The notes under the pieces are model-generated. The model worked only from the letters and a program-made list of their open reading frames with translations. It searched no databases and was not told the origin of the DNA. The position numbers and the translations under genes were made by a program. A stretch of 64,000 nt of DNA from Podarcis bocagei (lineage: Eukaryota): assembly GCA_964188305.1 (NCBI GenBank), contig OZ076886.1, one strand, 5' to 3'. Positions 275 to 30,341 of the stretch are shown piece by piece; the first letter of the stretch is position 1, and every line of letters starts with the position of its first letter.

Positions 275-370
275 TTAAACTGGCGTGTGTTGTTTTGTTT
301 GTTACTATGTTTTGGGTTTTTATACTGTAAACTGCCCTGTGATCCTTGGATGATGGGTGGTATAGACATT

Positions 371-7400: not shown

Positions 7401-10400
7401 ACACCCCTGGGAGCTCCAGCACGGTTGTAATACATACCTTGGCTCTGCCGAGGCACAATCTCCACCACGACGGAAGTGAGCTTTGTGTACCAGTCGTACT
7501 GGGGGGGGGGAGAGATCAAAAGGCATCAAAAAAGGATGTGGCAGTGCACAGCTTCCTGGCCCACAAATATTTTACAGCATCAAGACATGCTTCACGGAGG
7601 TGCTGAGGTGGCCTGATGTGATAGTTCTGGGTGGACAATGACAGGCCTTGGTTCTCCTTATGCTCTCACCGAGGAGCTCTGCCTCAATTCCTCTGACCAA
7701 GCTCTCCAAGAAGGAACCCTCATAACCCCTGCCAGCAAATATGGATTCCCCACTATAGTTGTCAACAAGGCAGAATTTACTCAGGCTCATGCAGAGCTTT
7801 GCCTGATCTCTCACACAACAGTTTGGCAAAGGCCAAAGAGCTCAATGACTTGTTCACAAAGCTGCCAACAGGACTTTCTGCATGGGGATTGGGCCCACTT
7901 CCCTATCTGCAGAAGAGGCCTCCGATTTGCAAAAAAATTGGGCCATATGCAAATACATACAAATTGACATTCTCTTCCGCGGGCAGGGAGGAGGACCCAA
8001 CAATAAATCAGGGGCCACACACAAGTAATAAGATGTCTGGGAGGCAGAAGGCCAAAAGCTGGAACTTTCCCCATAATTGTGTTTCTGTCCTAGAAAATAT
8101 GTGACCTGTTGAATTTCTACCTGACACTGCTCTCCCCCAGTGACAACTCCAAACCAGGCAAAAACCTCAATTTTCATGAACTGTAACACATTGTGAAGCT
8201 GAAATTTGTTTTTCCCTGGTGCGTTTGTGACTAATATTTCTCTACGGCGATCATCAGTCATTCACAACTGTGACTGTACTCCTTCAGCTGCAGCACAGAA
8301 AGACAGGAGCCGACTCATTTCTTACAAAGCAGTGGGTTAGACTGATGCCTCCGCATTTTGCTTTGTAACAACCTTCTTTCTGGAAAGGGCTAGATATTTA
8401 CATTTTTCAAAATGAAAACTCAGTCTTGGTCCCCTGCTACCTCTGGGCCCAGTTCAGAAGCATTCCTGATGCCTTCACCTCCGAAGTCTATATAGAGGGC
8501 AGGAGCTTATTCGTCTCTCATGCAAAGACTCAAGGCTCAAAAGCAATACTCACCATGCAGAGACGGCTGCACTGTTGGTGAGGCCCAGAAGCCGGGTTCT
8601 CCAGGTACACAATGCGACATTGGTCTGGACTCAGGCGTGGAGACCAAATGGCTTTGTTGTCGTCTGATAACAGCTCTGCAATGGGAAGGGAGACAGTGAA
8701 TTAAGAGAGAGGACTGAGAAGTCACTGCATGGCTGCTGCTGCTGCTGATAAACCAACAGGAAAACATGTCTCACCACAACGACCACCTGTCAGGTCCACA
8801 TAGAAGATAGCTGATCTGGAAGGAAAAGCACAAAACAGAAGTGGAGCTTACATGGAAGAGCACCACGTGAGACTGGCTAAGGGGGTGGGGACATCTATCT
8901 TCTCTCTGCAAGCTAGTGTCTCATTCATCACCCAGACAGGAACATAACAGGAATACTATTATTAATTACATTTTTATACCGACCTTCATCTGAGGATCAC
9001 AGGGTGGTTTACAATATAAAATCACAAAAATACATAACATAGTAACAAACAAAAACAATCCCCCCCCCCCCTGTTTAAAAGGACAGGGTGAAGAGGTGAC
9101 TTCTTCCTGATGAGGCAGCAGGGTGGTTCCCAAACAGGAAATGGGCAAGTTCTAGAATCGAAAAGGGCCCAAGTCCAATCTGGGCGCCTACTTCATCTGC
9201 ATGAAGCCACACTAGCTCCTCCATAGCCACAAGACCACATCCTCCCTGGCTACAGGTGTGTTTTGCAGGCATACAAAGCACCTCCAACCCCAAAGACTCC
9301 AGAATGTTCGTAGGCCCACTCCCCCATTTGGTCCCTCATCTATCTAATATAGTCAATCCCATTTGGATTCTTACTTGTCCTGGTAGGAAACTTACCTACG
9401 ATTGGTGCAGTACCTCAACCCTAGGCGGAAGGGCTCGTGCCACCAGCCTGTGAACACCACCCCAGTGTCGCCTGGAGCCCAGAAGGCCTGGGGGAGAAGG
9501 GAATGCCATGTCAGGTGTGGAGAGGAAGGCGGGTGACTCTAGCACATCTCCAGCATGCGGGGTTAAGATAGGTTGGAAGACAACAGCAGATGTATAATGA
9601 CCCAGCTAATATATACAGTGGTACTTCTGGTTGCAAACAGGATCCATTCTGGAGGCCCGTTCGCAACCTGAAGCGCTGTATCTGCGCAGGTGTGTGGCGC
9701 GATTTGGCGATTGTGCGCATGAGAAAGTGGCGAAACCCGGAAGTAACCCTTTCTGGCACTTCCGGGTCACCGCAGGACGCAACCTGAAAAAACGTAACAT
9801 GAAGCAAACGTAACATGAGGTATGACTGTACCATGGAAACCTGGAATTAAATGGATGGGGAACACCCCCTGGCTCTTGTCTTGGAAGATAATTTTGAAAT
9901 TATCTTTCCAGGAAAGCAGCATCTTGGCTGGCAAGCACAGAGTCCTTCCCGCTATATCCTAGCCATTTTGGAACAGCTATTATAGTATCGGAGTTGGCAA
10001 ATAACACTTTTGGGGGTGGGGGTAACAGGCAACACCGAGGATGACTCCACACTGTTTCTGTTCCAGATACCAAACTTGTGGGAATCTTCTGTAAGTTGCT
10101 TTTAGAGCCCCTCCTTGGGGCTAGAAGGCAGAATGCAAGTATTTAAAATAAATAAAAATACCCTTATCCAACTGGGCTTAACTGGGTGCCAACCTTCTCC
10201 CTCAGTTTATCCTGTACTGACCTGCCCAGGGGAGATGTGCTCTGGAACACTCTCCAGGACCGAAACGTTGTTGCTCTCAATGTCCAATACACACAGCACA
10301 GGGGTGCTTTTAGCCACCAGGGTCTCCCCCCAGTCTTCGTAGAACACAAACTGCTCTCCCTAGGAAAAGCAAAGAGAGATCCTGATGCAGAGGCAGCTCG

Positions 10401-13400
10401 AGTGACAGCAAAGGGAGTCTCACCTGCCTGGGAGATTGCCAGGGCCCGCATCACTGGTTTTGAACTTGGCGTCAGTTAAGTACTTCCCACTTCCTGAAGA
10501 GTGAGGAAGCCCACACACACATTTGCTTACAAACGCCGCAGTTCCACTGCAGGGACATCACCCTTGGAGGCAACTGCTCCCTCAGAGCCAACTGTTCAAG
10601 ATGCAAGCATTAGCTTTACTGCATTTCAGGTATAAGTGTAATTGGTAGTGCATTGCCTTATGAACAGAGATGCTTTGAGTATGGAAAAAAATGGCATAGG
10701 GTGATGATGAAGAGAAACTGAAATACTGGCTCGCAGGACACAAGGCAAAGCAGAAGTTCATTTTACCTTAATGGCTTTATCTCGTCGCTCTGTCTTGGCC
10801 AGCTCCTCTTCGCTGCTCAGCTCAGGGGCTTTTGGCTTAAAGAACGACTCAGCCTTGGGGCGCTTCTTCTCCGCCACGTAGAGAAGGTGCGTCTCAGAGT
10901 GTGACCAGGCCAAGCAGCCAAATTGGTCTGGGGCAGGGAACAAGATGACAACAGATTTCACTCAATCAAAAATGCAATGACCAGAAACATTCCTAGGTTT
11001 CTGTCAGGGTGATATGTGGGTGCTTGCGAAGATAACAGCTCGGGACTCCAGCGTGTCTTTTACAGGATTTATTGAGTGCAAAAGCTTATGTATAGTGCAG
11101 AGGTCTTGAAAGCATGTCTGCCTCAATCGCTAGCAGATTCCGGAAGTGGTTCTCGCCTGTTCCCCCTCCAGCAGAAAAGCCTCGGAAACCCCCCTCTTCT
11201 TTTCCTTTCCTTACGTGAAAAACTAAGCACCGGAAGCTGCTCTTTTCTCTCTTTTATAGCAGCCTTTGGGCTTCTCTCTCTCTCATCTTCCGTGTCTCCT
11301 GACAGTCTCTCTTCCCCTGACTCTGACGAAGTACAGCTGCTCATCAGAGGAGGCTCTCTGTACATTCTGGTGTCTCCCCCCTTCTCTGCAAACCAATCCC
11401 TGACAGTTCCCCAAGTCCCCTTTTCAAAAACAACTTCCCCTTATCAGTGCATATCAGGGATATCGGAGAACACCCTACCACCACCAGCACTCCCGAGCTG
11501 TAAGGAAAGGATGAATGTTGGGGCCTGGCTATCCTCTTCACTTGTCTCTTACAAATGGAAACAGAGCTGCAGGGAAAGCTCACCGTCCTCATACACTTGG
11601 CCATGCTTCTCCAGGGCTGTCAATTCAATGCTCTTCACCTTGCGGTTCTTTTCCCACACCTGTGGGAGCAGACACATGGCACATTTAGTCTCTGAACCCC
11701 TTTGCTTATGTACCCAGTGTCTTCTCAGAGACCGGACCTATTCTGAGCCACATGAAAGAGCCACAAACTGACCCCTTTCCTTTCAAACAAAAAGAAGCAA
11801 AAGCCACTCAAGTCAGAGTGCCATACAACTGCCTCCCGGGTTGGAAGCGTGACGGATAGTTTGAGAACCACTGAGCAAACGGGCCACATATGAAGCCACA
11901 TTGCTCTGGGAATGAAGGAGCAGAGCATCTCTGGAAGGTCTACCTTACACAGGAGAAACCTATTAGAGAGCCAGGGTATAAGTCTCTTCTCTCAGCTTTC
12001 TTCAAGCCAGCCATATATACCTCTAGGAACTGTTTCTCTTCGCCTTTGGTGTTGCTAGTCTTTCGTAGAACGGCTTTCTGTGCTCCACTGGGAGAGTCCC
12101 GACTGAGCAGCCTAAGAAGGAAAACAGCATGGTTAGCCTAGGAAAGATGGCTTTGGTCAGGCACAGGCCAGGACAAAAAAGGTACCAGAAAGGAAGGCAG
12201 CTCAGACTGTGCCCATCCTTCCAGGACAAGCAGGGGACATGTGGCCCTCCAGGTGTTGTTGGACTCCCCACTCCCCATCAGTTCAGATCACAGGCCATGC
12301 TGGCTATGCCTGAAGGGAGCAGCCCATCTGTCCTGGGAGAAACAGCCAGTGCTGACACCAAGGAAGGGGTCCTGCCGCTGCAAAGGGCAACAAACAAACA
12401 AACACCACACACAAGAGGCTTTGGAAGCACACCAAGCTAGGATATTGAAAGGGATGGATGGGTCGTGTGGATCATCTCCATTGCCATTTGATAAAGAAGT
12501 AAACATATGGCAATACATATAATGTATTAGAAGAACTACCTCGCCTTACATGTTTCCCCAGGGCAGGATGACACAAGAGAGAGCCTTTTTAAGTGTGGTG
12601 CCACAGCTGTGGAACATCCCTTCCAACCAAGGTCTGCTTATCTTTAGTAAGCAGTAAAAACTGGGAATTTCCAGAAGTTCCTGCTCAGTAAGTATATGCT
12701 GCTGGGCAGGTTTGCAGTTTTGTCTTTCCCTGTGGCTTCTGACAGTGCTAGATATTGCAGATTAGGGCACTTAACCATTGTTTTAGTGTTCTGATTTTCA
12801 GTCAGCTGCCTTAGAGGCCCCTTCGGTCCAAAATTATGGACTCTCAAATAATTTTGAAAATAAAGCAGTCTGATCTCATTAAAGGATTCGGATTGTTTTG
12901 GTGCAGAACCTGTATCCCAGGACTGGAAGTTCAAGGCTATGCTGATCCTTGGGAGACCCCCTTCAGCACAAGGCTTTGGGTAGTGATCTGCTGTTTCTGC
13001 AGAAAGCGTGGTGAAACACAACAAACAAGAGACTTACTCTCCCTTGATTTCCGTGCAATTGCCAGAGGGGCTTGAGTACACGATGGAGTGGCTGTCATGG
13101 AAGATGAGGTACTGATGGCAGAATTTTATATTTTCAGCTCTTTCCAAGTCTCGCTGAGACCACTCTGTAAAGGGAGGGAGAGAACTCAGTTTCTGTCCAG
13201 CCTACCACAGGAAGAACCAATCTTCCTCTACCACAAAAAAATCCCAACATCACTGTCCCATCCTCCTCTTCCCCCAACTATTTCAGGCAAGACCAGGAGC
13301 AGACAAGAGAAGCCTCCCCACACAAGAGACTTGCCTGTTAACCTACCTTAATATATTTCCAACACCAGTCAAATAACTTTATTTTCCCATGTCTAAAGTT

Positions 13401-16400
13401 ATGATTTCATCCTAGTTTGACTTCCGCAGATTTTATTCCATTGCCCCCCATTTTACATTGATTTGTTGCTGCAAAAAATATTTTATTTACTTTCTTACAT
13501 TTATATCCCACCCTTCTTCTGTCATGGCTTGCAACGTGGTTGGCAGGTGGTCTCCCATCCAGACACTGACCATACTCAGGCCTGCTTAGCTTCAGTAAAG
13601 CAGTGACCTCATGTGCATTCAGACCATACCCAGGGACCTGTTTTAATGTGATTTGTGACTATGTAATGATGCGGATTGTAGTTTGTTTTACTGTTAATTT
13701 CGGTCTCTCTCTGTGTGTTTTAAATCCCATTAAGCTGCCCAGTTATAGGGTCGCCTATACATTGAATGTATGTAAAAAGGCCCATCATGCCCATTCCTGG
13801 TTCAGGGTCAAGAATGCCAACAGCTCTATCTTTGGGCTTTATTTCTTATGATCATCAGAGGAAGATGAAAGTTGGTTTGATACTGAAGCACAGGAACCAG
13901 CCAGTCAAAGCCACAGAAACCATGGTGCTGACAGCTAGTCTCCTGGTTTATCTTGCCAGGAGTGATGGTTCAAGGCAAAGAAAAATGTACTCATTGCTTT
14001 TCATGAGGCATCCCAAAGTGAATCACAATATAAACACAGGTCCCAACTAATGTTGGCAACTAGGAGGGAGAGGGTTTACCTGTGTAAACGTTGCAGTATT
14101 TCCCACCATATTGAGTTGTTACCTCTGGCCCAATAGAGGCACTGGAAAGAGATGGGAACTGGCTAAGCTCACGGTACAAAGCAGCTATCTCCTCTGCGTC
14201 ATTCAACAACTGCACAATAAAAAGAAAGTAGCAGCGTAATTAGTTGGGACCAACTCCAGGTAAAAGCAACACAAGTACCTTTGCTCATGGCAAGTACCAA
14301 CTGCTTCCAGGTGAGAAGCTGGAACAGAGGGCAGGAAGCATGTAAGGTGGGGCCACTTTGGTGAGTTGAAGGAGAGAGAGCACACAGCTAGCTGGAGACA
14401 TAACAGTCCTGGCTTTGCACCTTCTGCAGGTTACAGGAAGGTTGGCTGTAGCAGCTGCTCCTAACTTCTTTTCCTACCTAAGCAGATGTACTGATGTGCA
14501 TACAGGAAAAATCACATCACTGCTGTAGATAGGAGAGAGAAGCTCATCACCTGCTTCTGAGCAAATTAAGCTGCCACACTGATATAGGGTGTATGTTTCT
14601 CCCTGTCTCCTGCTCAGTTTTCCTTTTTCATTCCCCACCACAACCAATACACAATCTATATTACTTATAAGTCCTTTCTCCTGGAACATTTTGGGTCCTT
14701 AGTTAATCTTTAAGGTGACACACAAGACTTGTTTTGTCCCAAGTTTGAAATCCAAAACAGACAAGAGCTGGACGTTTCTTGTCTACTTGTTTTTGAAACA
14801 GACAAAACCAGGAAGTCTGTTCTATATCAAGTTGCAGGTGCTGCAGCAAAAGTGCTCTTTCAACTACCAATACATTCATCAGCCCAGCAGCCCAAGTTAA
14901 TGTGTGACACTCTAGGCCTGCAGCAATTGAAACATGGTTTGTGGAAGGACAAAGTTTCAATAGCTACATTTGGCACACTATTTACTTTGGAAAGGCAGGG
15001 CAGGCAATCACATGGTAATTAAAGGCCAGTTATCACTCCTTCTATCTGAAAAGTTCACAAGCATGTGAGGATCCCGAATCAGCAACTTCCATGCAAAAGA
15101 GGGACATAAATTGTCATTGAAGCTAAATAGGAGGAGGGTAAAAACATTCCCTGCCTCCCTTGCTCATTAACATTTCATTTGTGCCATCAGGGCCACTGAC
15201 AACTACAAAATTTTGTTTGGAAAGGTGTCCAGGAAGAACTCTTCCTATATCCTTCCTGCTCCCCCCTCCCCTTTGTGTTTTTTCTAAACCAAGGATAGGG
15301 AACCTGTGGCCCTCCAGATGTTGGACTCCACCTCAGCTAACATGACCAATGGTCAGAGATGATAGGAGTTGAGAGTCCAACATCATTTAGGCTGCAAAGT
15401 CCAAACCCTGAGCAGACAGAAGAGCTGTTTATCAGATTGCCATGGCTGCCATGGACGCAGTCAGGATTTTTGTTAGGGAGGGCAGAACCTCAGTTAGCTA
15501 TGTATTTTTGCTGGTTTTTATAATTAGCTACACCCATGCTGTTTCGGCTGGCCAGGGTGGAAGGTGTGGGGATGCCTGGAGCTGGTGCAGCAGTTGGATG
15601 GAGACTGGGTCCGGTACCATCAGCAGTGAGGCTGACTTGCAATGCAATGGATCTCAGGCTGGTTCAGCTCTTCCCTGCCTTCACGTCACCTGGTTTTGGG
15701 GCTTTGTGTGGGCAGCTGCTGACAGGGATCCTGTCAGTGACACTTCCATAAACTTGTAGGCTCAGCAGGCAGAACAGGGGGGTCCATACTGGCAGACTGA
15801 TGCCACTGTGCAGGTGGAGGCCAGCAGAGCTGAGCAGAGGGACACCTCCACCCAATCTACCTGCCACACTGTGTCCAAGAGCCACAGGTCAGCCACTCCT
15901 GCCCTAAAGCAACAGGTCTCCTTTAGTGCAAGAGTTCAAAGTCCAGTTCTCTCTGCTACAGCTACTTCATACACTCAGTCCTCCGAAGCAAGTGAGAAAC
16001 CTTACCCTAATAACCCACTTGATATATGGGAACAACAGTGTGGTGACAAAGAATAAAGATATCCACCCCTCTCTCCGCCACCACCTTAAGACTTTCCCCC
16101 TGTAGCAACCTAAATTCATGCCACATCCAGTCACCCATGCGCTCAGGGTTCTTAAACCATGCCAGGTCAACACGCTAAAAAACAAAATGTTTTAGAGCTG
16201 TGACGGTTCCCACCTTGCGTGCACGTGATTTTATTTTATTTTTTGAGGGAGGGAGTACTGCGAAAGGAAGAAACTTTTTCTTTTGACTGGAGATATAAAG
16301 AAGAGTTGCCACATTCTCCCCACCCACCCCCAATTATATCTCCATATTGGCCGGGTGTGCCTGTGGAGAAGAGTTGTTTCACACGTTGCAGTTGTGCTCA

Positions 16401-16725
16401 TCTCGCGGCTCTTAAAAGCGGAGGTTGGGGGAGAGGAAGGGAGCCAGCAGCCTTGGAGCGCGGCCCGTATGCCGCCCCCAGGAACAATCCTAGGCGGACA
16501 GCTAAAAGGAGTCCATTCACACGTTCGTGCCCCTCCGAAGGGGCTGCTGGGAACCCCAACACACAAACACGCCCGCCCGAAACAGCGCGGAGCATTGTGG
16601 GAAGGTCTGCTCAACGAGCACCAGGAGCTGCTTCAGGCGGGCGCAGCCCACCCCACCCCCCGCATCCTCTTGGGGGGGCGGACCCGGGGAACCCCCTCCC
16701 CCGCGTTTCTCACCGGTGGTTCCAT
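1349..16725 (-). CDS. APEH: Acylamino-acid-releasing enzyme (S9C serine peptidase), complete 22-exon CDS, 728 aa
   Basis: The 22 exons listed below join in frame to 2187 nt with GT-AG junctions. Motifs: GGSHGG nucleophile Ser, EEDRRVP Asp, NNHSL His, HGGPHS, VNYRGS. Position next to BSN matches vertebrate synteny. Confidence 0.97.
1661..1767 (-). CDS. APEH: APEH exon 21 (catalytic Asp)
   Basis: [35 protein letters not shown]; 107 nt, AG/GTAAG. Confidence 0.95.
1893..1995 (-). CDS. APEH: APEH exon 20
   Basis: [34 protein letters not shown]; 103 nt. Confidence 0.93.
2150..2440 (+). mobile_element. Degenerate CR1 LINE 3' fragment
   Basis: gtgatggtcaccaacttggatggttttaaa...ctatcaatagctactagcca...ctctgaatacca; resembles 42720-42840. 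Confidence 0.6.
2499..2689 (-). CDS. APEH: APEH exon 19 (catalytic Ser)
   Basis: [49 protein letters not shown]...DIPDW; 191 nt. Confidence 0.97.
2816..2904 (-). CDS. APEH: APEH exon 18
   Basis: [30 protein letters not shown]; 89 nt. Confidence 0.95.
3471..3551 (-). CDS. APEH: APEH exon 17
   Basis: [27 protein letters not shown]; 81 nt. Confidence 0.95.
3651..3734 (-). CDS. APEH: APEH exon 16
   Basis: [28 protein letters not shown]; 84 nt. Confidence 0.95.
4109..4247 (-). CDS. APEH: APEH exon 15
   Basis: [46 protein letters not shown]; 139 nt. Confidence 0.95.
4888..4976 (-). CDS. APEH: APEH exon 14
   Basis: [30 protein letters not shown]; 89 nt. Confidence 0.93.
5899..5950 (-). CDS. APEH: APEH exon 13
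   Basis: [17 protein letters not shown]; 52 nt, ctag/GTAAGT. Confidence 0.92.
6048..6072. repeat. (CA)n microsatellite
   Basis: Dinucleotide run. Confidence 0.9.
6335..6432 (-). CDS. APEH: APEH exon 12
   Basis: [33 protein letters not shown]; 98 nt. Confidence 0.95.
7438..7498 (-). CDS. APEH: APEH exon 11
   Basis: [20 protein letters not shown]; 61 nt. Confidence 0.94.
8554..8675 (-). CDS. APEH: APEH exon 10
   Basis: [41 protein letters not shown]; 122 nt. Confidence 0.95.
8775..8815 (-). CDS. APEH: APEH exon 9
   Basis: [13 protein letters not shown]; 41 nt. Confidence 0.92.
8960..9080 (-). mobile_element. L2-like LINE 3' end
   Basis: Reverse-complement similarity to 275-380. Confidence 0.6.
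9396..9487 (-). CDS. APEH: APEH exon 8
   Basis: [30 protein letters not shown]; 92 nt. Confidence 0.95.
9616..9828. mobile_element. Tc1/mariner (Tigger-like) MITE
   Basis: TA|CAGTGGTAC...GGTATGACTG|TA termini with TA target duplication. Confidence 0.8.
10222..10359 (-). CDS. APEH: APEH exon 7
   Basis: [46 protein letters not shown]; 138 nt. Confidence 0.95.
10767..10927 (-). CDS. APEH: APEH exon 6
   Basis: [30 protein letters not shown]...DKAIK; 161 nt. Confidence 0.95.
11002..11405 (-). mobile_element. Solo LTR in APEH intron 5
   Basis: TGTCAGGG...CCCTGACA 8-bp inverted termini, 5-bp flanks gtttc/gttcc, TATAAAA (11252-11258) and AATAAA (11068-11073) in LTR order on minus. Confidence 0.8.
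11584..11659 (-). CDS. APEH: APEH exon 5
   Basis: [25 protein letters not shown]; 76 nt. Confidence 0.95.
12021..12111 (-). CDS. APEH: APEH exon 4
   Basis: [30 protein letters not shown]; 91 nt. Confidence 0.94.
13038..13164 (-). CDS. APEH: APEH exon 3
   Basis: [43 protein letters not shown]; 127 nt. Confidence 0.95.
14080..14209 (-). CDS. APEH: APEH exon 2
   Basis: [43 protein letters not shown]; 130 nt. Confidence 0.94.
15290..15410. mobile_element. Old hAT-type MITE
   Basis: gatagggaacctgtggccctccagatgttggact... similar to 29132-29267; other decayed copies near 12235, 19640 and 20150. Confidence 0.6.
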
Positions 16726-17080
16726 CTCCTATGCCGCTGCGCCCAGTCCTGGAGGTTCGAAGTTCGGTCACCTTCCGCTCGGTACCTCCAGGGTGGGTGG
16801 GGCTGTTCCTTTTCGGTCCCGCCTACTTCCATTGGCTGTGGACCTGCCCGTCAAAATCAGCGCGCGCTGCTCAGTGGGAAGCCTGGTCATCGCTTTTATC
16901 TGGAGACACGACTTCCTGTGTTGCAAGGCAAAGCCTCGGCTTGTCGTGGACGTCTCTGACCACCCGGCCTGTTCGTGCTCTTGTCTTTCTAAACCGACCC
17001 TTTCCCCCACACTAATGTGAATTTGCAATCACTTAAAAATGTGTTTCAGGCGAAGATCTTCGTGGCGGGGCTTGAAGGAC
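16380..17080 (-). promoter_or_regulatory. APEH CpG-island promoter
   Basis: CpG-dense segment around exon 1; GC box (cccgcc, about 16818-16823), CCAAT on minus (16831-16835), ETS-type CAGGAAGT on minus (16911-16918). Confidence 0.8.
16714..16725 (-). CDS. APEH: APEH exon 1 coding part (MEPP)
   Basis: GAG-ATG-G Kozak context, ATG GAA CCA CCG then GTGAGA donor, inside the CpG island; phase 0 fits exon 2. Confidence 0.82.
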
Positions 17081-22078: not shown

Positions 22079-22769
22079 GCTGTACCACCAATCTGAAAAC
22101 TAGGCTCTAGAAGGAAGTGTATGGAGAAGCAAGGAAAGTTTACACAGCTTTCAAATCTAGGTAACCCCCCTGGGGGGGGGGAAACCATCCTAACTTTATG
22201 TGCCCCCAGCAGGCAGGGACTCAGCCTTGTGAATCATATTAAGTCCTTTTATTCTGTTTTCCACAGAAATACCTTGTAGGGCAACTTCCCATACGGAATC
22301 ACAATACATGAGGTGGTACACTGAAATACTACAAGTTCTCACAGAGCACAGCAGGACACACACATCATTTACAATGTTCAGATAAAGGATTTAGGTCATT
22401 GCACTTACAACTGTAAACTTCTTCTTTTGTTTGATGGGTGGTGGTTGGTATTTTTTAAAATAATTTTTATACAGAACCCCTCCTGCCTCCAAGATAATAA
22501 AAATAAAAAAGAGATAAGGGAACAACTCAAGATACATGGGAGGCAGGACGAGGGCATGAAAGGTACATGTCATGTGACAGCCACAACAACTCTACAAGAC
22601 TCTGCTATGCTTTGCAAGAAGAGGAACAGTCCAAAGGAGCCAGTCACAAACACCAGGCTTTGTTTGTTGATCTTTTGTACACAAAAGCAAGAGTTGGCAG
22701 GTGTGCTGGTTGGTGAGATGGAGCCCCCGAAAAGGGGCCTGTGAGTTGTTGTTTTTCTTTTTTTTCTTC

Positions 22770-25700
22770 ATACCACATGAGTTTTTTAATTTAGTTTTAT
22801 TATTTTACACACTGTACAAATATTTACAATGGAAGGGAGGGAGGGAGGTTGTAGCAGCCACTGTTGAGAAAACCTGTAGGGGACACAAATTCAACCTAGA
22901 GCCCTGAAGAAGCATCCTCAGATTTTGCACTTGTCATTGTGGGTAATCCTTTGTATATTTTGGGGGGCGGGGGGACAGGGGAGGCCTGAGTGGTGGGGAA
23001 GGAGCTGGGTGGAGAAACTTGCAGTTGTTGCTACCAAATGCCTTGTTTGACTCAAGTTGGAAGCAAATCTCCATTTTGGGAGTCTCTACCCCAGCTTGCC
23101 ATCCTAGCTGAAGCAGCTGCCAAGAACATATGCTTACCAACCAAGCCTTCCATCCTGTATGTAGGTCCACTATGAGTAGCTGCCACCCCTTCTACTTGGA
23201 ATTGTTTCCAGTCTGTCTATCATCAGAAAGATCCATGAACTCCATAACTGCTATGGTGGCCACAACTCCAAGATGAACCAAACAGGTATGCAGACTGCTG
23301 CCAAAACGGTCTTCACAATGGGTGATTGCCAACAAGGCGAGTGTGCAGTTTCCTTGCCCATGGAAAACTCAACTAGCATTCTCTGAAGCTAAGGTGATAT
23401 TTTCTGGTCTCCTCCAATGAGACAGCACAGTGAGGTAGGGCCCAAGTACCTGCGTATGCTTTTATTACTAGAGTAACCAATTCAACAGTGCAAGGAATTC
23501 AAGAGGCAGCCAGCTTGAAAGCATGGCCTCTGCCTTTATCTCCTACATGCATTTCCACGTCCTAAGCCAACTGCTGTATCAAATGATTGGCCTTTGTTCT
23601 ACAAAGCATTCTACGCTGGTAAAATACTCTGGCTTGGCTACTTTAGAAGACAGCCTCTAGTCTACATACATATGATAACTTTCCCCACATTGTAATCCAT
23701 GGGAAGGAATAACTTAAGGCTTAGAGGTCACTCAAGGGTACCAGAGCAGGAGGGGAAGATGGTGCCAAAGGTTGTGTAGGCAGTATATCTGCATCTTGAC
23801 TGAGAAGCTGGATTCTTAGCAAACAACTGAACTACCATCAAGAGACCTTCCTCCTAATATTTTTAGACTTGCAACTCAACATCATGTCTGCACCAGACCC
23901 ATTCAGGTATCAGGTGCAGTTGCATTGCCCGTGTAGCTTCTACCCTGTAGACTTTGACCCTGGTCCCCTTTATCCATCCACACAGCTGGTGGGGATGACT
24001 GTGTCTCCCTCAGGCAGACACTGGTTCTCATTGCATAGGTGTCCGAGGCAAAAAGGGACCTGCCTTTTCTAAGGCTTTTGGCCAGATCTCTAGTTGGGCA
24101 CCATAGTGACAAACTAGGAGCACAGGCAATTGCTGTGTGAATGTGCTCTCTAAGATGACAAGGAGAGGCCACTGCTGTCCAAAGATGTTGCAAAGTGTGA
24201 GTCTTCCCTAAGTGCACTCCATGGGAACCATGCAAGCATGTCTGCCTTTACAGTTTTGCTTATAGTGTCACAGTCCTCTTTTCTTTTTAGTTAGAAAATG
24301 AACCACACAATATGCTAGCTGTTCACATGAGTCTCTTGTAACATTAAGGCTTATATCAAAATAATGCAGACCTGGATTAATTACTGTAGAGAGCTCATGT
24401 GAGTCCAACCCCCAGCTGCCTAAGGGCCACAGCATACATTCCCTTTTCAGCACGCTCCTTTTTTAAGCGCTCACATAAAATAGAAAAGCGTGAAAGCGTG
24501 AAACACATTTGCAAGTGTGTTTTAAGTATCAAATAGACCAGGAATACGAGTCAGGGAGTCCTGGTGAGCTGCTGCTCCCTGAGTGTCCAGTTGGTACCCA
24601 GGTTTGCCTCTGCAAAAGGGGTGACGTGGCCCTTAGACTCACTGATCTGTCAGGTTCTCTTAAAAATGTCACAAACTTCTGGGTTTGCAAGAACCTCTCG
24701 TGTAACAGAGGTAGTTGCCTCTGAACCTTTCCCCTTCTCCTCTGTCAGGAAAAGCCCATACAGTTTTGTTCCAATTTTTGCAGAGCTCTGCCTCGGAGTC
24801 TAACCATGGAGGAAAAGGCCCTGCACCACCATTGTACCAAGGGTGCTTGGTATGGCGGAAGTGAGTTGGAACGGTCTCTATTCTGGAACCTACTTCAGCT
24901 TAAACTGCACCGCTCAGTGGCTGCCAGCCTCCCATTGTCAGGAGCTGCCGTTTAGTAGGTCTTTATTCAGTGACATTGTGCTTGTGGGAACAGGAGACAT
25001 CACTGCTGTTTCCCAGGTTCTGAACTTAGGGGAGGGGAATAAGGTGCTTTCTTTACACTAACCGATTCCACACTGCTCAAATTGTCCATGCAGAATTTAT
25101 TGGGGTAACTGAGTCTTGGAACACCTCCCCCAGCCTGTGGTGCTCTCGAACCAAGATAGAATTTGGGCTTAATATTGTTTTGGCCAGGAGGAATGTGCTT
25201 CAGGTCTCAAGAAAGCCCAGGAAGTCCCTTGAACTGGACACTAATGGCTACTCCAGGGAAGGATGTGGCAAAGGACCAATAGTTAATGGAGTTCCACAGG
25301 ACACATCTGGTGTTATATTCTGCAGGATAATGATGCTTCGTGGTGTCACTGACAGGCCTTCAATAACAAGTGCATAAATCTGCTAATGGCATTCAGAAGT
25401 GATGATGAACCAACTGGAGAGAGAGAGAGAAAAAAAAACCTCAAGCAAAGAACGGCAAGCATTCTAAATAGATGAAACCGTGCAGAGAAGTAGCAAGCCA
25501 TGCTCTACAACAGACAGAGACAGTCACCGGCTCTATGGCTACCCTTTGGCAAAAGTGTCCCTCGGATGGGTCAAGCATGCCACTAATTGAAAACTTCATA
25601 CGCACAGGTGTTCAATATAAAGATACCTATCCAGTTTCTCAATAGCACATTTGCAATTAAATCCTTATACATAACATTGAACTTATTAAATATTAACAGT

Positions 25701-27187
25701 TGTTTTTTTAAACTTTTTTTTGTTTTGTTATTTCATTGCATAGAACATTAGACATGAGAATCATTTTGCTGTTACCCACGGTGAATGGAAGCTCCTATGG
25801 GTCACACCAATGAATTGTTGCTCTTGAGCATGCTCAGTGTGGACGAGAGACGGGCAGGAAACAGACAGCGCAGACAAATGGGAGCCAGAGCATCCATACA
25901 CTTGCTGGATTCTTTACAGCAAAGGAAAAGAGGAGCCGTTTCACAGGGTTTTCTTTCGGCTCTCGCGGGTAACAGTGCCAGGAGCTCCTCGCCAGCAGGT
26001 TCAGCAACATCCTGCCCCCAGGGAGCTCCTCCGTCGTTCTGAGCATGCCCACTGGTAATGGCTTAAGAAGGACTTGAATTGCACAGTAGTAGTAGGAAGG
26101 AGGATGGCAGAGGCAAGCTCTCCTGATCTCATCACACTGGATTGTGCTCTTTTTTGTAGCCTTCTGCACTCTATTGCTTCTACCGACAACAGTCCATGTG
26201 CTAACGCAGGACAAAGCAAAGAGGAAAAACAGTATGTTCGATACAAAGTAAAAAACAAAAACTGAGAACAAAAAAGAACCTCACAAAAAAAAGAAAAAAA
26301 AAGAAAATTTAAAATAAATCCAAACCCCCAGTTGCTGGGTGCTGATGAGGTATACGCATAAATAAAAGTGGAATGATTAAGGCTGTTTTTGAAATAAAAA
26401 TAATCCCCAGGCATACATAAAACAATGCACAACACTAACAACGGAAAGCACTGCCATTTGAATGCTTTAGAATGGCTTCAGGATGGCTTTGGGGTGGCTG
26501 ATAGACATGCCTGGCCAGCATTTGCTTCAGTCAATAGTCAGCCAGTTTGCACTGCCTTTCAGAGTCCTATGGCCTCTTATCTCAGTGGTGAAACAGTGTT
26601 AGGTCCTAGTCAAAGTTCTCTTCATCCCATGCTTTCCATTGCAGGGAGGATGAGAGGGAACAAACACTGTGCAGGCGGAGCGACCGACAGGGCAAACTGG
26701 AATGTGAAGAGCAGAGCCTCCAGCTCCCAGCCCTCAACTCAAGCACATCTTGGAGAGTGGGAAAAACCTATGAAGAGTTAAAATTCAGTAAGAGAGAAAA
26801 CTCTGCGTATAATCTCAAGAAAGGGCCATGGCTCCCAACATTAGACCTTAGGCACAAATGGAACCACCGCAGTGAGTAGTCTCTGGAGCCCCAGACATCC
26901 CCTCCAAGATCAGGGAAGTGGCCAGTCTGTGTGACAAGCTGGGACCGGGCCATGTTCTGTAAACGTCTTTTATGTACATCTTCTCAGACTAAGCATCTGC
27001 CTTCACCCCTTGGGGCTCATGCGATGAACACCGTGGAGTTGACAGCAGGCGGCTTCTGAAAGCCTTTTGCGACAGTTGGCTCAGATGTCCTCAAGGAGCT
27101 TCTTATGGGATCCACTGGCAAATGTCTCCGTAAAGATCTTTTCCGCCTTCCATCTCGCAGCCTAGTGGTTTTCCATGGTTTCAAAAG
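22770..27187 (-). other. BSN: BSN terminal 3'UTR exon (about 4.4 kb)
   Basis: ttctctcttttgtctcatcaag acceptor at 27187; repeat-poor; ends TGTAAATATTTGTACAG...AATAAA (22796-22801) and ATTAAA (22785-22790). Confidence 0.7.
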
Positions 27188-27654
27188 CTTGATGAGACAA
27201 AAGAGAGAATCAGAAATATTCTATTTACAAGAGGTCATTCACAGAAACACAATTTCTTGCCATGCCATGGTTTGGCACAAATTTTCCTGATCCTCTCTGG
27301 ATATTCACTCACAGCACCACCCGAGAAAGCTCTGCTGTACTGTACTGTTTATGGCTGCAGTGTGCCTCTCTCATTTCTCAAAACCAAAGCACAAAAGCAA
27401 CCCAAAGAACTAGCCAGAAAAGACCACCAATCAAAGAGCATGAACAGTTTACATAATGACATTAGCTGCCCACGCTTACTGAGATGCAACCGTTTCATAC
27501 TGGGGTTGTCTAAAACTGAGGATTGAAAGAGCCAGCACTTTCCCCAAAGAGATTTGTTGTTTGCTTTCACCTCTCCACTCAAACCCGGGGGCAGACCTGG
27601 CTCATACTGCAATGTACAGACTGAGGCAGCAAGTGTAAGAAGCTACCCACTTAC

Positions 27655-27719
27655 CTCAGCTGGGATAAGTTCAATTTCCCCCTCAAATCAAAAAGCATGC
27701 AGTCCTTTCAGTGAGCTCT
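27655..27719 (-). other. BSN: BSN non-coding 3'UTR exon (65 nt)
   Basis: tttttgtccattttag acceptor and GAG|GTAAGT consensus donor. Confidence 0.7.
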
Positions 27720-28968
27720 CTAAAATGGACAAAAACACAGACAGGGCCATGAAAGGAGATAGTGCTGTAAGTGGCAAAGCTCTGAGCACACCCAGGGGAT
27801 GGAATCAGCTGGACAAAAATGTTCTCTGCTTGTGGCTCAGGGCTGTGGCCCTGGGACCTATGCAGGCTTGTGCTGCTACCCACATTCTGGAGCTGCCATG
27901 GGTCTCTCTGCCTCTTCCCCTCATTTCAACTCTTCCCAAGGTAAGAGTGTTCTGCATATGGCACACTGGCTTTCCTGGTGGAACTTAGCACAGCACTGCA
28001 CAAAACAGGCTCTTTCCCCTCCCGCTTCCAGATGAGCTGCTGTGTTCTATTGATAGAGCAAAGAGAAAGGATTGTTGTCTGCTGCCTGCAGTGAGAGGAC
28101 TGCTAATAACAGCTGCTTTCCCCAAAACAGTCACTGCAATATTGTGCTGAGCGAAGCGGTATTTCTTAGTCAAAATAAGCAGCAAAAAGCAAATATCCTC
28201 ACTCATGCCTTCTTCTTATGCTCCCCGTTATCCATTTTACATCTGGATTGCTGGTCTGGGGGCTTAATTCTTTAAGGCTGTGGCTGACAGAATAAATTTT
28301 ATGCCACAGCAAAGCCATTTTGATGCCTTACCATTACAGACAACAGAGTTAAGCACCAAACAAATGGGACACATTTCTACAGTTGGTTCCAGACAATCTA
28401 TTTACTGGCCATTCATCCTGATTTGTTTGCAAAGCGTTTGCGGGGACAACACCAGTTATTTATGGAGCATCCATACTGATTTGTTTGCAGGGAGGTTTTA
28501 TGACATTGTGCCAACTACGTGTTATCCCACACCTTAATTTTCTTGCTTCCTCTATCACAGTAGCAGAGTTCACCCAGTTGGGTGCAGCTGCAACATCCTG
28601 GCAGGTGTGTCACTGCTGCTTAATGTGAGGAGGAAGAAGGGGAAAGAGGAGATGGCGGGGAGGCTGGTGTGGCATGGTTACCATGGCAGGAGCAAAGGAA
28701 TAGCCCCACTGTTGAGCCCACACCATCCTAGCCTCCCTCTTGCCTAGTCCCTCTTGCTCCTGGTTAAGCAGCAGAGGCACTGCTGCAAGGAAGTTAGCGC
28801 TGCAACTCTGCTGTAGCAGGCGACCTGCTGTTTTGCTCCATCATGCTTTATCATCTCTTTTCCCCCGCCACGGCTGTCCCCAGACATGCTGTCCTCTGTG
28901 TCTAGAACATCTTCCCGCTGTATGTAAGAGTATTTAGTGCCTCAGCCTCCTTTAAGCCCTTCTTCTTT

Positions 28969-29095
28969 AGAATCATAGTGTAGAGTTGGAAGGGGCCCTC
29001 AGCGTCATCTAGTCCAATGCAGGAATGTCAGCTAAAGCATCATGACTGATGGCCATCCAACCTCTGCTTAAAAACCTCTAAGGAAGGAGATTCCT
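28969..29095 (-). mobile_element. CR1 LINE 3' terminal fragment
   Basis: agaatcatag...agagttggaagggg...ccatccaacctctgcttaaaaacctc is the reverse CR1 tail (ATTCT). Confidence 0.75.
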
Positions 29096-29115
29096 TTAAC
29101 ATGGCCTTTCCCAAA

Positions 29116-29379
29116 CTCAGATGGTTAAGAGCAGGCTTCCTCAACCTCGGACCTCCATATGTTTTGAGACTACAATTCCCATCATCCCTGACCACTGGTC
29201 CTGCTAGCTAGGGATCATGGGAGTTGTAGGCCAAAAACATCTGGAGGGCCGAGGTTGAGGAAGCCTGGTTAAGAGTGTGGTGCTGATAACGCCAATGCTG
29301 GTAAGGGCCAGCTGCATATTCCTGCATTGCAGGGTGTTAGACTAGATGATCCTCAGGATCCCTCCAACTCTATGATTCT
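29116..29379 (+). mobile_element. tRNA-head/CR1-tail SINE interrupted by a MITE
   Basis: ctcagatggttaagag/tgtggtgctgataacgccaa head and ccaactctatgattct tail. Confidence 0.7.
29132..29267. mobile_element. hAT MITE (palindromic, 136 bp)
   Basis: TIR CAGGCTTCCTCAACCTCGG, perfect 8-bp TSD GTTAAGAG. Confidence 0.92.
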
Positions 29380-29784
29380 TTGAAACCATCCTAGCCACAC
29401 CGACCTGCACCTTCATTTCCTCCTCCGTGTCAGTCCCTGCCTTCCCCTGCCCCCACTAGCTATATCCACCTAATACAGACTGTAAGGTCTGAATGGGGAC
29501 TGTCTCTTTTCTCTAAGTCTGTACAGTGTGTAGCATGCTGTGGACATTAAACAAACATTTAGCAGCAACAGGATATACTCTTGACTGGAAGTGGCACGGC
29601 TTACCTAAACTATCAGGCAAATTGCCATAAGCTAAGCAGGATATCATATGACTAGGTAAAAGAAATATCTTCTCTGGGCTTTGTATCTTGGGGGCCATCA
29701 CTGAGCCTTGATGAAAGCCAAGTATCCGATCTCATCCACATCCTCAGAAGAATGTAGGAATGGAGGCAATGAGGTGACACTCAC

Positions 29785-29883
29785 TGTTATACTCAGAGTC
29801 TGGTGCGGCAGACTGAATTCCAATGGATTCTTCATAGGTTTTTCCAGTGCAATGATGAGATCTCCATTTATTCTCCCAAACTC
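29785..29883 (-). other. BSN: Candidate BSN 99-nt exon downstream of the stop exon
   Basis: Long polypyrimidine tract (ctttttcttgtgtctctccatcaccccggcag) and ACA|GTGAGT donor. Confidence 0.6.
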
Positions 29884-30300
29884 CTGCCGGGGTGATGGAG
29901 AGACACAAGAAAAAGATATGGCTATTAGGAAAGAATCATATACATGTGCAGAAAAAAAGAAAAATGTCAGAGTAACTGAAGGGGGCGCTTGGATTAACAG
30001 AGCAATAGGTTAGCTCTGATGTTAGGGTGCTGCAGCAATGAAAGGCGCCTGTTGAGGGACAGAAGTTGAACCAAGCTATTAAACAGGAAATTACGCCAGG
30101 ACCTCTTTCGATGGCAATGGCCAGAGAAGATGAAATGTATCAGGAGCTTTGCTTGGCAGCTGTAATGTCATTGGGGGTTGTGTATATATACTTTGTTGGA
30201 AGCCACCCAGAATGGCTGGGACAGCCCAGTCAGATGTGTGGGGTACAAGAAATAAATTATTATTACCACAACAAAAAGTGACTCACCCAGCGATGTTCTC

Positions 30301-30341
30301 TCACCAAAATGATGTGAATTTCTTGCCAAAAGCTGACACAG
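30301..30341 (-). CDS. BSN: BSN last coding exon (equivalent to exon 10)
   Basis: cccatag|AVSAFGKKFTSFW-TGA; the exon continues 14 nt to a GTGAGT donor at 30286. Confidence 0.94.

What the first reader, a model, noticed from the sequence alone, without database searches (positions are those of the whole stretch)
26760..29845. Splicing-dependent long-range RNA duplex in the BSN 3'UTR (17-bp perfect complement)
Seen: 29829-29845 (tcttcataggtttttcc) is the exact reverse complement of 26760-26776 (ggaaaaacctatgaaga). One arm lies in the candidate 99-nt exon, the other in the terminal UTR exon, and neither is in a recognisable repeat. After splicing they would be about 520 nt apart. A 17-mer match inside a 4.6-kb UTR is unlikely by chance (rough expectation about 1e-3), though less surprising across 64 kb. 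Inference: exon inclusion could switch on a dsRNA element affecting Staufen binding, mRNA transport or decay, or the pairing could guide splicing across the UTR introns.
Basis: partly seen in the sequence, partly recalled or inferred. Interest (0 to 1): 0.7.

Follow-up and report, generated by a model that had tools for sequence, protein, structure and literature searches.

The report
Ancient long-range RNA duplex, Bassoon 3'UTR
The 17-base match is real and is the perfect core of a roughly 60-base RNA pairing between two non-coding exons at the end of the Bassoon (BSN) synapse gene; the pairing is kept from frog to lizard, bird and vole, so it is probably a functional RNA structure whose role is still untested.

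Summary
26760-26776 and 29829-29845 are exact reverse complements, and these are the only two copies in the window.

A 17-mer alone is weak evidence. About 0.28 such pairs are expected per 64-kb window, and this window holds a second one.

The context and the comparisons make it stronger:
- **Gene:** BSN lies on the minus strand. Its true stop codon (30301-30303) sits in a 55-nt exon.
- **Arm B:** it lies in a 99-nt non-coding exon, called Ed in this report (29785-29883). RNA-like contigs of two related lizards show Ed spliced to the stop-codon exon.
- **Arm A:** it lies about 0.9 kb into the terminal UTR exon, which starts at 27719.
- **Extent:** in the window the pairing is 17 + 12 + 14 bp. 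The last helix ends 2 nt before Ed's 5' splice site.
- **Conservation:** I fetched the orthologous loci of three other squamates, two birds, a vole and a frog. All keep Ed, its splice sites and both arms in register.
- **Co-evolution:** some base pairs changed on both sides (vole, frog, Sceloporus). Arms of the same lineage pair better than swapped arms.

Verdict: a conserved long-range 3'UTR duplex, at least about 350 My old. Its function (control of the last UTR intron, or a platform for proteins that bind double-stranded RNA) is inferred, not shown.

The parts
29829..29845 (-).
   Evidence: It is identical in Sceloporus and in both birds. It has 1 change in Rhineura and in Lerista, 4 in the vole and 3 in the frog.
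26760..26776 (-).
   Evidence: In birds it is an island of identity whose flanks have diverged. The stretch 26450-27200 is held at 0.64-0.75 of its words by at least 14 RNA-like runs of 3 related species.
29812..29823 (-). Helix H2, 5' strand (UUGGAAUUCAGU), specific to squamates
   Evidence: 12 bp including G-U pairs; the middle region pairs better than shuffles in the window (P<0.001) and in Sceloporus (0.009). The test is not significant in the GC-rich tinamou or vole.
26778..26789 (-). Helix H2, 3' strand (ACUGAAUUUUAA)
29787..29801 (-). Helix H3, 5' strand (AGACUCUG-A-GUAUAA). It ends 2 nt before the Ed 5' splice site.
   Evidence: 8 + 6 bp with a 1x1 mismatch; all 13 pairs are invariant in 7 amniotes. 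The frog keeps 8 + 7 bp around a small internal loop of 1-2 nt per strand.
26798..26812 (-). Helix H3, 3' strand (UUAUAC-G-CAGAGUUU)
29785..29883 (-). Exon Ed: the 99-nt non-coding penultimate exon of BSN (acceptor cag|G, donor A|GUGAGU)
   Evidence: Joint 29882->30286 in contigs of X1 and X5. An X5 contig ends exactly at 29785. Both splice sites are conserved in 8 tetrapods. It is not coding: Rhineura has a TAG in one frame, the indels are not multiples of 3, and all changes in the other open frame are non-synonymous (and my reading of it).
30287..30341 (-). The 55-nt exon that carries the real BSN stop codon (TGA, 30301-30303), 14 nt before its donor
   Evidence: the spliced translation ends ...AVSAFGKKFTSFW*, as do 85 of 120 BSN proteins; stop + 14 nt + GT in all 8 species.
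26450..27719 (-). The 5' part of the terminal 3'UTR exon. The acceptor uuuuag|AG is at 27720/27719. The conserved block runs on to about 25150.
   Evidence: The X5 contig 27233-27719 carries 30 extra letters at its 27719 end. The acceptor is conserved in 4 squamates. The block is 80-84% identical over 2-3.4 kb with three other squamates. It is transcribed.
27720..29784 (-). The last 3'UTR intron (2,065 nt). It starts GUGAGUGUCA and holds a high-copy repeat at 28979-29370.
   Evidence: the X1 contig 29705-29884 reads through the donor, so the intron is retained or unspliced in that sample. Low-depth contigs cover parts of it.

Best explanation
The 17-bp complement is the perfect core of an ancient, selected long-range RNA duplex inside the BSN (Bassoon) transcript.

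**Anatomy.** One strand is the 3' two-thirds of the 99-nt non-coding penultimate exon Ed, right up to its 5' splice site. The other strand lies about 0.9 kb into the terminal 3'UTR exon. In the window the duplex has three helices: H1 (17 bp), H2 (12 bp) and H3 (8+6 bp).

**Shown here.** The arms are in one transcription unit. They pair in silico. The pairing is conserved in register in 8 tetrapods, with some compensatory changes.

**Inferred: how it works.**
- In the pre-mRNA the duplex ties the Ed 5' splice site to the terminal exon. It thereby sets how often the last 3'UTR intron is removed. That junction lies about 113 nt after the stop codon, so its removal would deposit an exon-junction complex that marks the mRNA for nonsense-mediated decay (NMD).
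- In the mature mRNA both strands are exonic. The duplex then closes a loop of about 1 kb and offers an imperfect stretch of about 45-60 bp of double-stranded RNA to binding proteins such as Staufen.

**My split, given that the duplex is real:** splice-site or intron control 0.4; platform for double-stranded-RNA-binding proteins (localisation or stability) 0.35; both or other 0.25.
For: - **Gene model:** (BSN on the minus strand; stop in the 55-nt exon; stop + 14 nt + GT donor in all 8 species).
- **Splicing of Ed:** (joints in X1 and X5; acceptor at 27719).
- **Arm A transcribed:**
- **Helix coordinates:**
- **Core duplex strength:** -49.8 kcal/mol against 977 control segments of the same region (mean -19.7, sd 5.3, best -39.7; z = -5.7).
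- **Orthologues:** Rhineura, Sceloporus, Lerista, two birds, a vole and a frog all keep Ed and both arms. blastn itself reports reverse-strand hits between Ed and the arm-A region within the vole (63 nt, E = 0.001), within the frog (52/77, E = 5e-5), and across lizard and bird.
- **H3:** 13 pairs invariant in 7 amniotes.
- **Changes on both sides in H1:** positions 11 and 14 in the vole (A:U to C:G and A:U to G:C), and position 9 in the frog (C:G to U:A).
- **A further candidate helix:** UGGAGA/UCUCCA becomes UGGAAA/UUUCCA in Sceloporus (alignments).
- **Co-evolution:** cognate arm pairs rank 1 of 24 permutations in all 8 sets of clade representatives.
- **Islands:** in birds the arms are identical while the spacer and flanks are diverged.
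- **Folding:** H1 is in the minimum-energy fold of spliced forms, with pair probability 0.87-1.0.
Against: - Only 8 species were compared, and there is no phylogeny-aware covariation statistic. The rank-1/24 results are not independent of each other.
- H3 never varies in the 7 amniotes, so by itself it says nothing about pairing.
- H1 also carries uncompensated mismatches: Rhineura 2, Lerista 1, painted-snipe 1, vole 2, frog 3.
- The middle helix is not demonstrably conserved outside squamates.
- The minimum-energy fold of the unspliced 3.3-kb RNA does not contain H1.
- No experimental structure, protein-binding or splicing data were available.
- The Ed-to-27719 junction is inferred from a contig boundary, not seen as a listed joint.
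- The RNA-like runs are only guessed to be RNA, and they are from related species, not the window's own.
Confidence: 0.75

Rival explanations
1. Chance complementarity. Each arm is conserved for its own reasons (an exonic splicing signal next to a 5' splice site; a protein or microRNA site in a conserved UTR), and the pairing has no role.
For:: a 17-mer inverted pair is expected in about a quarter of 64-kb windows, and the scan covers very many windows; a second such pair is in this window. H3 is invariant in amniotes (no covariation) and several H1 mismatches are uncompensated; duplex energies of whole 110-nt segments do not discriminate.
Against: Two separate helices (H1 and H3) are co-linear and antiparallel in all 8 species. 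Some changes hit both sides. Cognate arms always pair best. Core z = -5.7. Arm A is an island of identity in birds.
Confidence: 0.1
2. Relic of an ancient inverted duplication, or a transposon pair, kept at the DNA level or by two unrelated constraints. The complementarity reflects common origin, not RNA pairing.
For:: read on opposite strands, the two sites resemble each other over about 59 nt with small gaps, as copies would. Inverted repeats in UTRs often come from mobile elements.
Against: There are only two copies in the window and read depth is ordinary, so this is not a repeat family. Both sites are at orthologous places in frog, mammal, birds and lizards, so any duplication is older than tetrapods. 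About 350 My of neutral drift would have erased it. Changes on both sides and lineage-specific extensions (19 bp in the tinamou, 7 extra bp in the painted-snipe) point to selection for pairing.
Confidence: 0.07
3. The duplex is an ADAR substrate. The downstream strand serves as the editing-complementary sequence for one or more adenosines in Ed or at its splice site, as at the GluA2 R/G site next to a 5' splice site.
For: It is an imperfect double-stranded RNA of more than 40 bp abutting a 5' splice site in a neuronal gene. H3 carries a conserved 1x1 mismatch whose bases vary but never pair (A.G, G.A, G.G, C.A; alignment).
Against: No A-to-G difference in the arms is listed in the contig comparison, though coverage there is thin and 113 rows were not shown. 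The mismatched A faces G, which is unfavourable for ADAR (general knowledge). Ed is non-coding, so there is no recoding pay-off.
Confidence: 0.08

Closest known systems
Staufen-bound long-range 3'UTR duplexes (STAU1 hiCLIP; Chakrabarti et al. 2023, PMC10164587)
   Same: Both are intramolecular duplexes within a 3'UTR whose arms lie hundreds of nt to kilobases apart. The paper reports a long-range class of more than 100 nt span with a mean near 252 nt, a median of about 20 paired bases, A:U-rich symmetrical stems, and a link to lower degradation rates. The BSN core (17 bp, 11 A:U pairs; loop of about 1 kb after splicing) fits that description.
   Different: No Staufen cross-linking is known for BSN. 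This duplex spans an exon junction, ends at a splice site, and is conserved across tetrapods, which was not shown for most hiCLIP duplexes.
Conserved long-range pre-mRNA pairings that control splicing (PCCRs, Kalmykova et al. 2021, PMC8052449; ATE1, PMC7797038)
   Same: Both are pairs of conserved complementary regions up to 10 kb apart, some overlapping splice sites, and associated with splice-site choice.
   Different: That catalogue excludes all annotated exons apart from 10 nt at their edges, and BSN is not mentioned in its text. Here both strands are exonic UTR and survive in the mature mRNA.
Retained 3'UTR intron of Calm3 bound by Staufen2 (Sharangdhar et al. 2017, as summarised in PMC11446172)
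   Same: A neuronal mRNA with a 3'UTR intron that is sometimes retained, and a link between that retention and localisation by a protein that binds double-stranded RNA. Bsn mRNA is itself found in neuropil and is enriched in presynaptic synaptosomes.
   Different: In Calm3 the protein binds inside the retained intron. Here the paired strands are in the flanking exons. The original paper is not in the held library, so I could not check whether Bsn is among its 28 targets.
Arc-type conserved 3'UTR introns that make a synaptic mRNA a natural NMD target (my own knowledge: Giorgi et al. 2007)
   Same: The stop codon lies upstream of conserved 3'UTR introns, and the last junction is more than 55 nt after the stop (about 113 nt here).
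   Different: NMD of BSN mRNA is not shown, and no long-range duplex is described for Arc.

Membership tests
Conserved long-range RNA duplex (PCCR-like) | Two complementary regions in one transcript, conserved at orthologous positions | tested here: met
   H1 and H3 are present in register in 8 tetrapods.
Conserved long-range RNA duplex (PCCR-like) | Compensatory substitutions that keep the pairing | tested here: inconclusive
   Three H1 pairs changed on both sides (vole positions 11 and 14, frog position 9), plus one pair in a candidate extra helix in Sceloporus. Cognate arms rank best in 1 of 24 permutations. There are also 9 uncompensated mismatches, only 8 species, and no phylogeny-aware test.
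Conserved long-range RNA duplex (PCCR-like) | The pairing changes splicing when disrupted and restored | not testable with these tools
   This needs a minigene. The only hints are that H3 ends 2 nt from the 5' splice site and that a consensus donor is read through in one sample.
Staufen-binding 3'UTR duplex | Stable intramolecular duplex inside the 3'UTR of the mature mRNA | tested here: met
   In silico only. H1 alone is -24.6 kcal/mol with pair probability 0.87-1.0 in spliced forms. The core is -49.8 kcal/mol.
Staufen-binding 3'UTR duplex | Cross-linking of STAU1 or STAU2 to the duplex | not testable with these tools
   No CLIP or hiCLIP data were at hand.
Transposon-derived inverted repeat (IRAlu-like) | Arms belong to a dispersed repeat family | tested here: not met
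   There are only 2 copies in 64 kb even with 2 mismatches allowed. Depth is ordinary at arm B, against about 10,000 for the true repeat at 28979-29370. The arms are orthologous in frog, vole, birds and lizards.
ADAR editing site with complementary sequence | A-to-G differences between RNA and DNA within the duplex | tested here: inconclusive
   None is listed in the arms. However, these are contigs of other species, and 113 rows were not shown.
Coding exon (alternative BSN C-terminus) | An open frame kept across species, with mostly synonymous change | tested here: not met
   Frame 1 has a TAG in Rhineura. The exon length differs by non-multiples of 3 (Lerista -1, birds -1, vole -5). All frame-2 changes are non-synonymous. 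The vole model that reads Ed as coding depends on reading through an intron.

The most novel reading that the evidence does not exclude
The duplex is a tetrapod-wide RNA switch in the Bassoon mRNA. By masking or presenting the 5' splice site of a conserved 99-nt 3'UTR exon, it would decide between two forms. One is a fully spliced mRNA that carries an exon-junction complex about 113 nt after the stop and is therefore limited by NMD. The other retains the last intron and is stable. In the mature mRNA the same duplex would recruit Staufen-type proteins for delivery towards presynaptic sites. That would be a structural link between 3'UTR splicing, decay and localisation of a core active-zone gene.
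Probability: 0.3. Interest if true: 0.8.

Novelty: new member of a known kind. Interest (0 to 1): 0.62.

Why it matters
Bassoon is a core scaffold of the presynaptic active zone, and its mRNA is found in neuropil and presynaptic fractions. A structure kept for about 350 My in its 3'UTR, touching a splice site of a conserved UTR intron, is a concrete and mutable handle on how this very long mRNA is processed, stabilised or localised.

It also shows that exon-exon long-range pairings exist and can be found from sequence. Catalogues built on intronic sequence skip them by design.

The claim is directly testable with disrupting and restoring mutations.

Tried and rejected
- **Chance match.** This was my opening view (65%). 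The orthologue comparisons overturned it.
- **Stop codon at 32712 with a single-exon UTR.** Wrong. Splice joints and translation put the stop at 30301-30303.
- **Small exons belong to APEH.** Rejected. They encode the BSN C-terminus. The APEH exons recognised here lie at about 2477-6658 on the minus strand (Peptidase_S9 hit at 2480-2746); further exons and a CpG-like stretch at 16200-17020, perhaps its promoter, are my guess.
- **Ed as a coding exon.** Rejected (see the membership test).
- **Transposon pair.** Rejected.
- **Anchored-extension test.** It gave only P = 0.03 on one side and nothing on the other. This under-rated the similarity because of its gap costs.
- **Duplex energies of whole 110-nt segments.** They do not discriminate: z = -3.8, and unrelated segments score as well. 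I replaced them with the core test.
- **Middle-helix conservation outside squamates.** Not demonstrable.
- **Database scans.** Rfam has no family at either arm. Pfam finds nothing on the BSN open reading frames.
- **Poly(A) signal.** AATAAA at 25096-25101 is not conserved, so the 3' end of the mRNA is not fixed. The AATAAA inside Ed (29867-29872) is not conserved either.
- **Failed look-ups.** The gene range was too long for Candoia, Caretta and Crocodylus. Varanus and emu are not on record.
- **Literature.** Paper PMC5623867 is not held. No paper links Bassoon to UTR introns and NMD.
- **Read filter.** Read laying showed zero depth at 26400-27199 although the same runs hold that stretch. After that I sent this stretch only by reference to the look-up of sequencing runs, and I compared it only with non-human loci. 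No human contig was fetched or used.
Full report
**Observation**

The plus-strand 17-mer GGAAAAACCTATGAAGA at 26760-26776 has its exact reverse complement at 29829-29845. With up to two mismatches allowed there are no further copies in the window. The perfect run is bounded by mismatches on both sides.

Simulated sequence of the same local composition gives 0.28 long-range inverted runs of 17 nt or more per 64-kb window, so P(at least one) is 0.27. Within a 5.2-kb UTR span the expectation is 0.003. The window also holds another such pair, at 293/9038. On its own, therefore, the match could be a scan-level chance find. That was my opening view.

**Gene model**

- The large minus-strand open reading frames are Bassoon. 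The 2,274-aa frame is 88% identical to Rhineura floridana protein bassoon, and other squamates, birds and mammals follow.
- Contigs of two RNA-like runs from related lizards (X1 and X5) lie on the stretch with GT..AG joints on the minus strand: 32084<-31352, 31213<-30341 and 30286<-29882.
- Joining those exons gives ...SVFSKILPGGAAEQAGKLTEAVSAFGKKFTSFW*. This is the C-terminus of 85 of 120 retrieved BSN proteins.
- So the real stop codon is at 30301-30303, in a 55-nt exon (30287-30341), not at 32712.
- It is followed by 14 nt and a donor. Next come a 403-nt intron and the 99-nt exon Ed (29785-29883; acceptor cag|G, donor A|GTGAGT), which holds arm B.
- An X5 contig ends exactly at the Ed donor. 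Another X5 contig covers 27233-27719 and carries 30 extra letters at 27719. There the genome reads uuuuag|AG, an acceptor conserved in four squamates. I take 27719 as the start of the terminal exon. This is an inference, because the joint itself was not among the rows listed.
- In X1 a contig reads straight through the Ed donor (29705-29884), so that intron is not always removed.
- Arm A lies 943 nt into the terminal exon.
- Read laying showed no depth at 26400-27199. Yet the same runs, and at least a dozen others from three related species, hold 0.64-0.75 of the words of 26450-27200. The hole is therefore the tool's silent filter, and the arm-A region is transcribed.

**Extent of the pairing in the window**

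| Helix | Ed strand | Terminal-exon strand | Pairs |
|---|---|---|---|
| H1 | 29829-29845 | 26760-26776 | 17 bp |
| H2 | 29812-29823 | 26778-26789 | 12 bp, with G-U pairs |
| H3 | 29787-29801 | 26798-26812 | 8 + 6 bp around a 1x1 mismatch |

H3 ends 2 nt before the 5' splice site.

The core duplex scores -49.8 kcal/mol. The same Ed strand paired with 977 other segments of the region gives a mean of -19.7, sd 5.3 and a best value of -39.7, so z = -5.7.

H1 is in the minimum-energy fold of every spliced form tried, with pair probabilities of 0.87-1.0. It is not in the fold of the unspliced 3.3-kb RNA. These are predictions only.

**Comparison with other species**

I fetched BSN loci with 10 kb of downstream flank through exact-protein look-ups:
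- Rhineura (L001), Sceloporus (L002) and Lerista (L003);
- the birds Nycticryphes (L004) and Nothoprocta (L005);
- the vole Microtus ochrogaster (L006);
- the frog Hymenochirus (L007).

What they show:
- In all of them the stop codon is followed by exactly 14 nt and a GT donor. An Ed-like exon with both splice sites follows.
- The terminal UTR block is 80-84% identical among squamates over 2-3.4 kb.
- Arm B is identical in Sceloporus and in both birds. Arm A is identical in Lerista and the tinamou.
- In birds the arms and the H3 strands stand out as islands of identity, while the spacer and flanks have diverged.
- All 13 pairs of H3 are invariant in the seven amniotes. The frog keeps 8 + 7 bp around a small internal loop.
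- In H1, the vole changed positions 11 and 14 on both strands (A:U to C:G and A:U to G:C). The frog changed position 9 on both strands (C:G to U:A).
- Sceloporus turns a candidate extra helix from UGGAGA/UCUCCA into UGGAAA/UUUCCA (alignments).
- The tinamou extends H1 to 19 bp. The painted-snipe adds 7 bp next to it.
- blastn independently reports reverse-strand similarity between Ed and the arm-A site within the vole (E = 0.001), within the frog (E = 5e-5), and between lizard and bird.
- Pairing each lineage's Ed strand with every lineage's downstream strand, the cognate combination is the best of 24 permutations in all eight choices of clade representatives.

Against this:
- There are uncompensated mismatches: Rhineura 2, Lerista 1, painted-snipe 1, vole 2, frog 3.
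- H2 is not demonstrably kept outside squamates.
- Eight species do not allow a phylogeny-aware statistic.

**What it is not**

- **Not a repeat family:** two copies only, ordinary depth, orthologous in all species.
- **Not coding:** stop codons, indels that shift the frame, and non-synonymous change. The vole model that reads Ed as protein relies on reading through an intron.
- **Not a described RNA family:** Rfam gives nothing at either arm.

**Mechanism**

Three things are shown: both strands belong to the BSN 3'UTR, they are complementary, and the complementarity has been maintained since before frogs and amniotes split.

The function is inferred. H3 abuts the Ed donor, and that consensus donor is nevertheless read through in one sample. 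I therefore favour control of the last 3'UTR intron. That junction lies about 113 nt after the stop codon, beyond the usual limit of about 55 nt, so its removal should mark the mRNA for nonsense-mediated decay, as in Arc (my own knowledge).

Both strands are exonic in every species. In birds, terminal-exon sequence already lies between Ed and arm A. So the duplex also persists in the mature mRNA. There it resembles the long-range, A:U-rich 3'UTR duplexes bound by Staufen, in a transcript known to reach neuropil and presynaptic fractions. These two roles are not exclusive.

**Known or new**

Long-range conserved pairings and Staufen-type UTR duplexes are established kinds. The main human catalogue of conserved complementary regions excludes exons by design and does not mention BSN. 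My searches found no paper linking Bassoon with UTR introns and NMD. I file this as a new member of a known kind.

**Limits**

- The RNA-like runs are only guessed to be RNA, and they come from relatives of the window's species.
- No human sequence was used.

Noticed in passing
window 30287-30341, 29785-29883, 27719 (minus strand); L001-L007: BSN has two conserved 3'UTR introns. In all 8 tetrapods the stop codon is followed by exactly 14 nt and a GT donor. The last exon junction lies about 95-115 nt after the stop, an architecture eligible for nonsense-mediated decay, like that of Arc.
   Followed up: partly
window 28979-29370: A high-copy repeat lies inside the last UTR intron. It has a 58-nt hairpin, 88% complementary (29132-29189 / 29210-29267), depth of about 10,000 in RNA-like runs, many opposite-strand joints, and a sub-threshold Rfam hit to mir-5408 (39 bits against a gathering score of 90).
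   Followed up: no
window 22236-22431: A non-coding block between BSN and APEH is 82% identical to frog (L007 44435-44629). It is also found in the vole (L006 53078-53245) and both birds. There is no Rfam match and no convincing open reading frame, so it is unexplained.
   Followed up: partly
window 293-309 and 9038-9054: A second perfect 17-mer long-range inverted pair (TTTTGTTTGTTACTATG), 8.7 kb apart, in the APEH part of the window. It was not examined.
   Followed up: no
window 2477-10454 and 16200-17020 (minus strand): APEH exons lie downstream of BSN on the same strand (Peptidase_S9 hit at 2480-2746). A GC-rich stretch at 16200-17020 may be its promoter. Synteny of BSN and APEH holds in birds and the vole.
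   Followed up: partly
window 26400-27199: read laying returned zero depth here for runs that hold 0.72 of the stretch's words.
   Followed up: yes
L006 46014-46205, 46769-46862, 52175-52273: The deposited vole BSN protein model (P0099) lacks the canonical ...SFW end. It reads through an intron, uses Ed as coding sequence, and adds a far-downstream exon. This is probably a gene-prediction artefact.
   Followed up: partly
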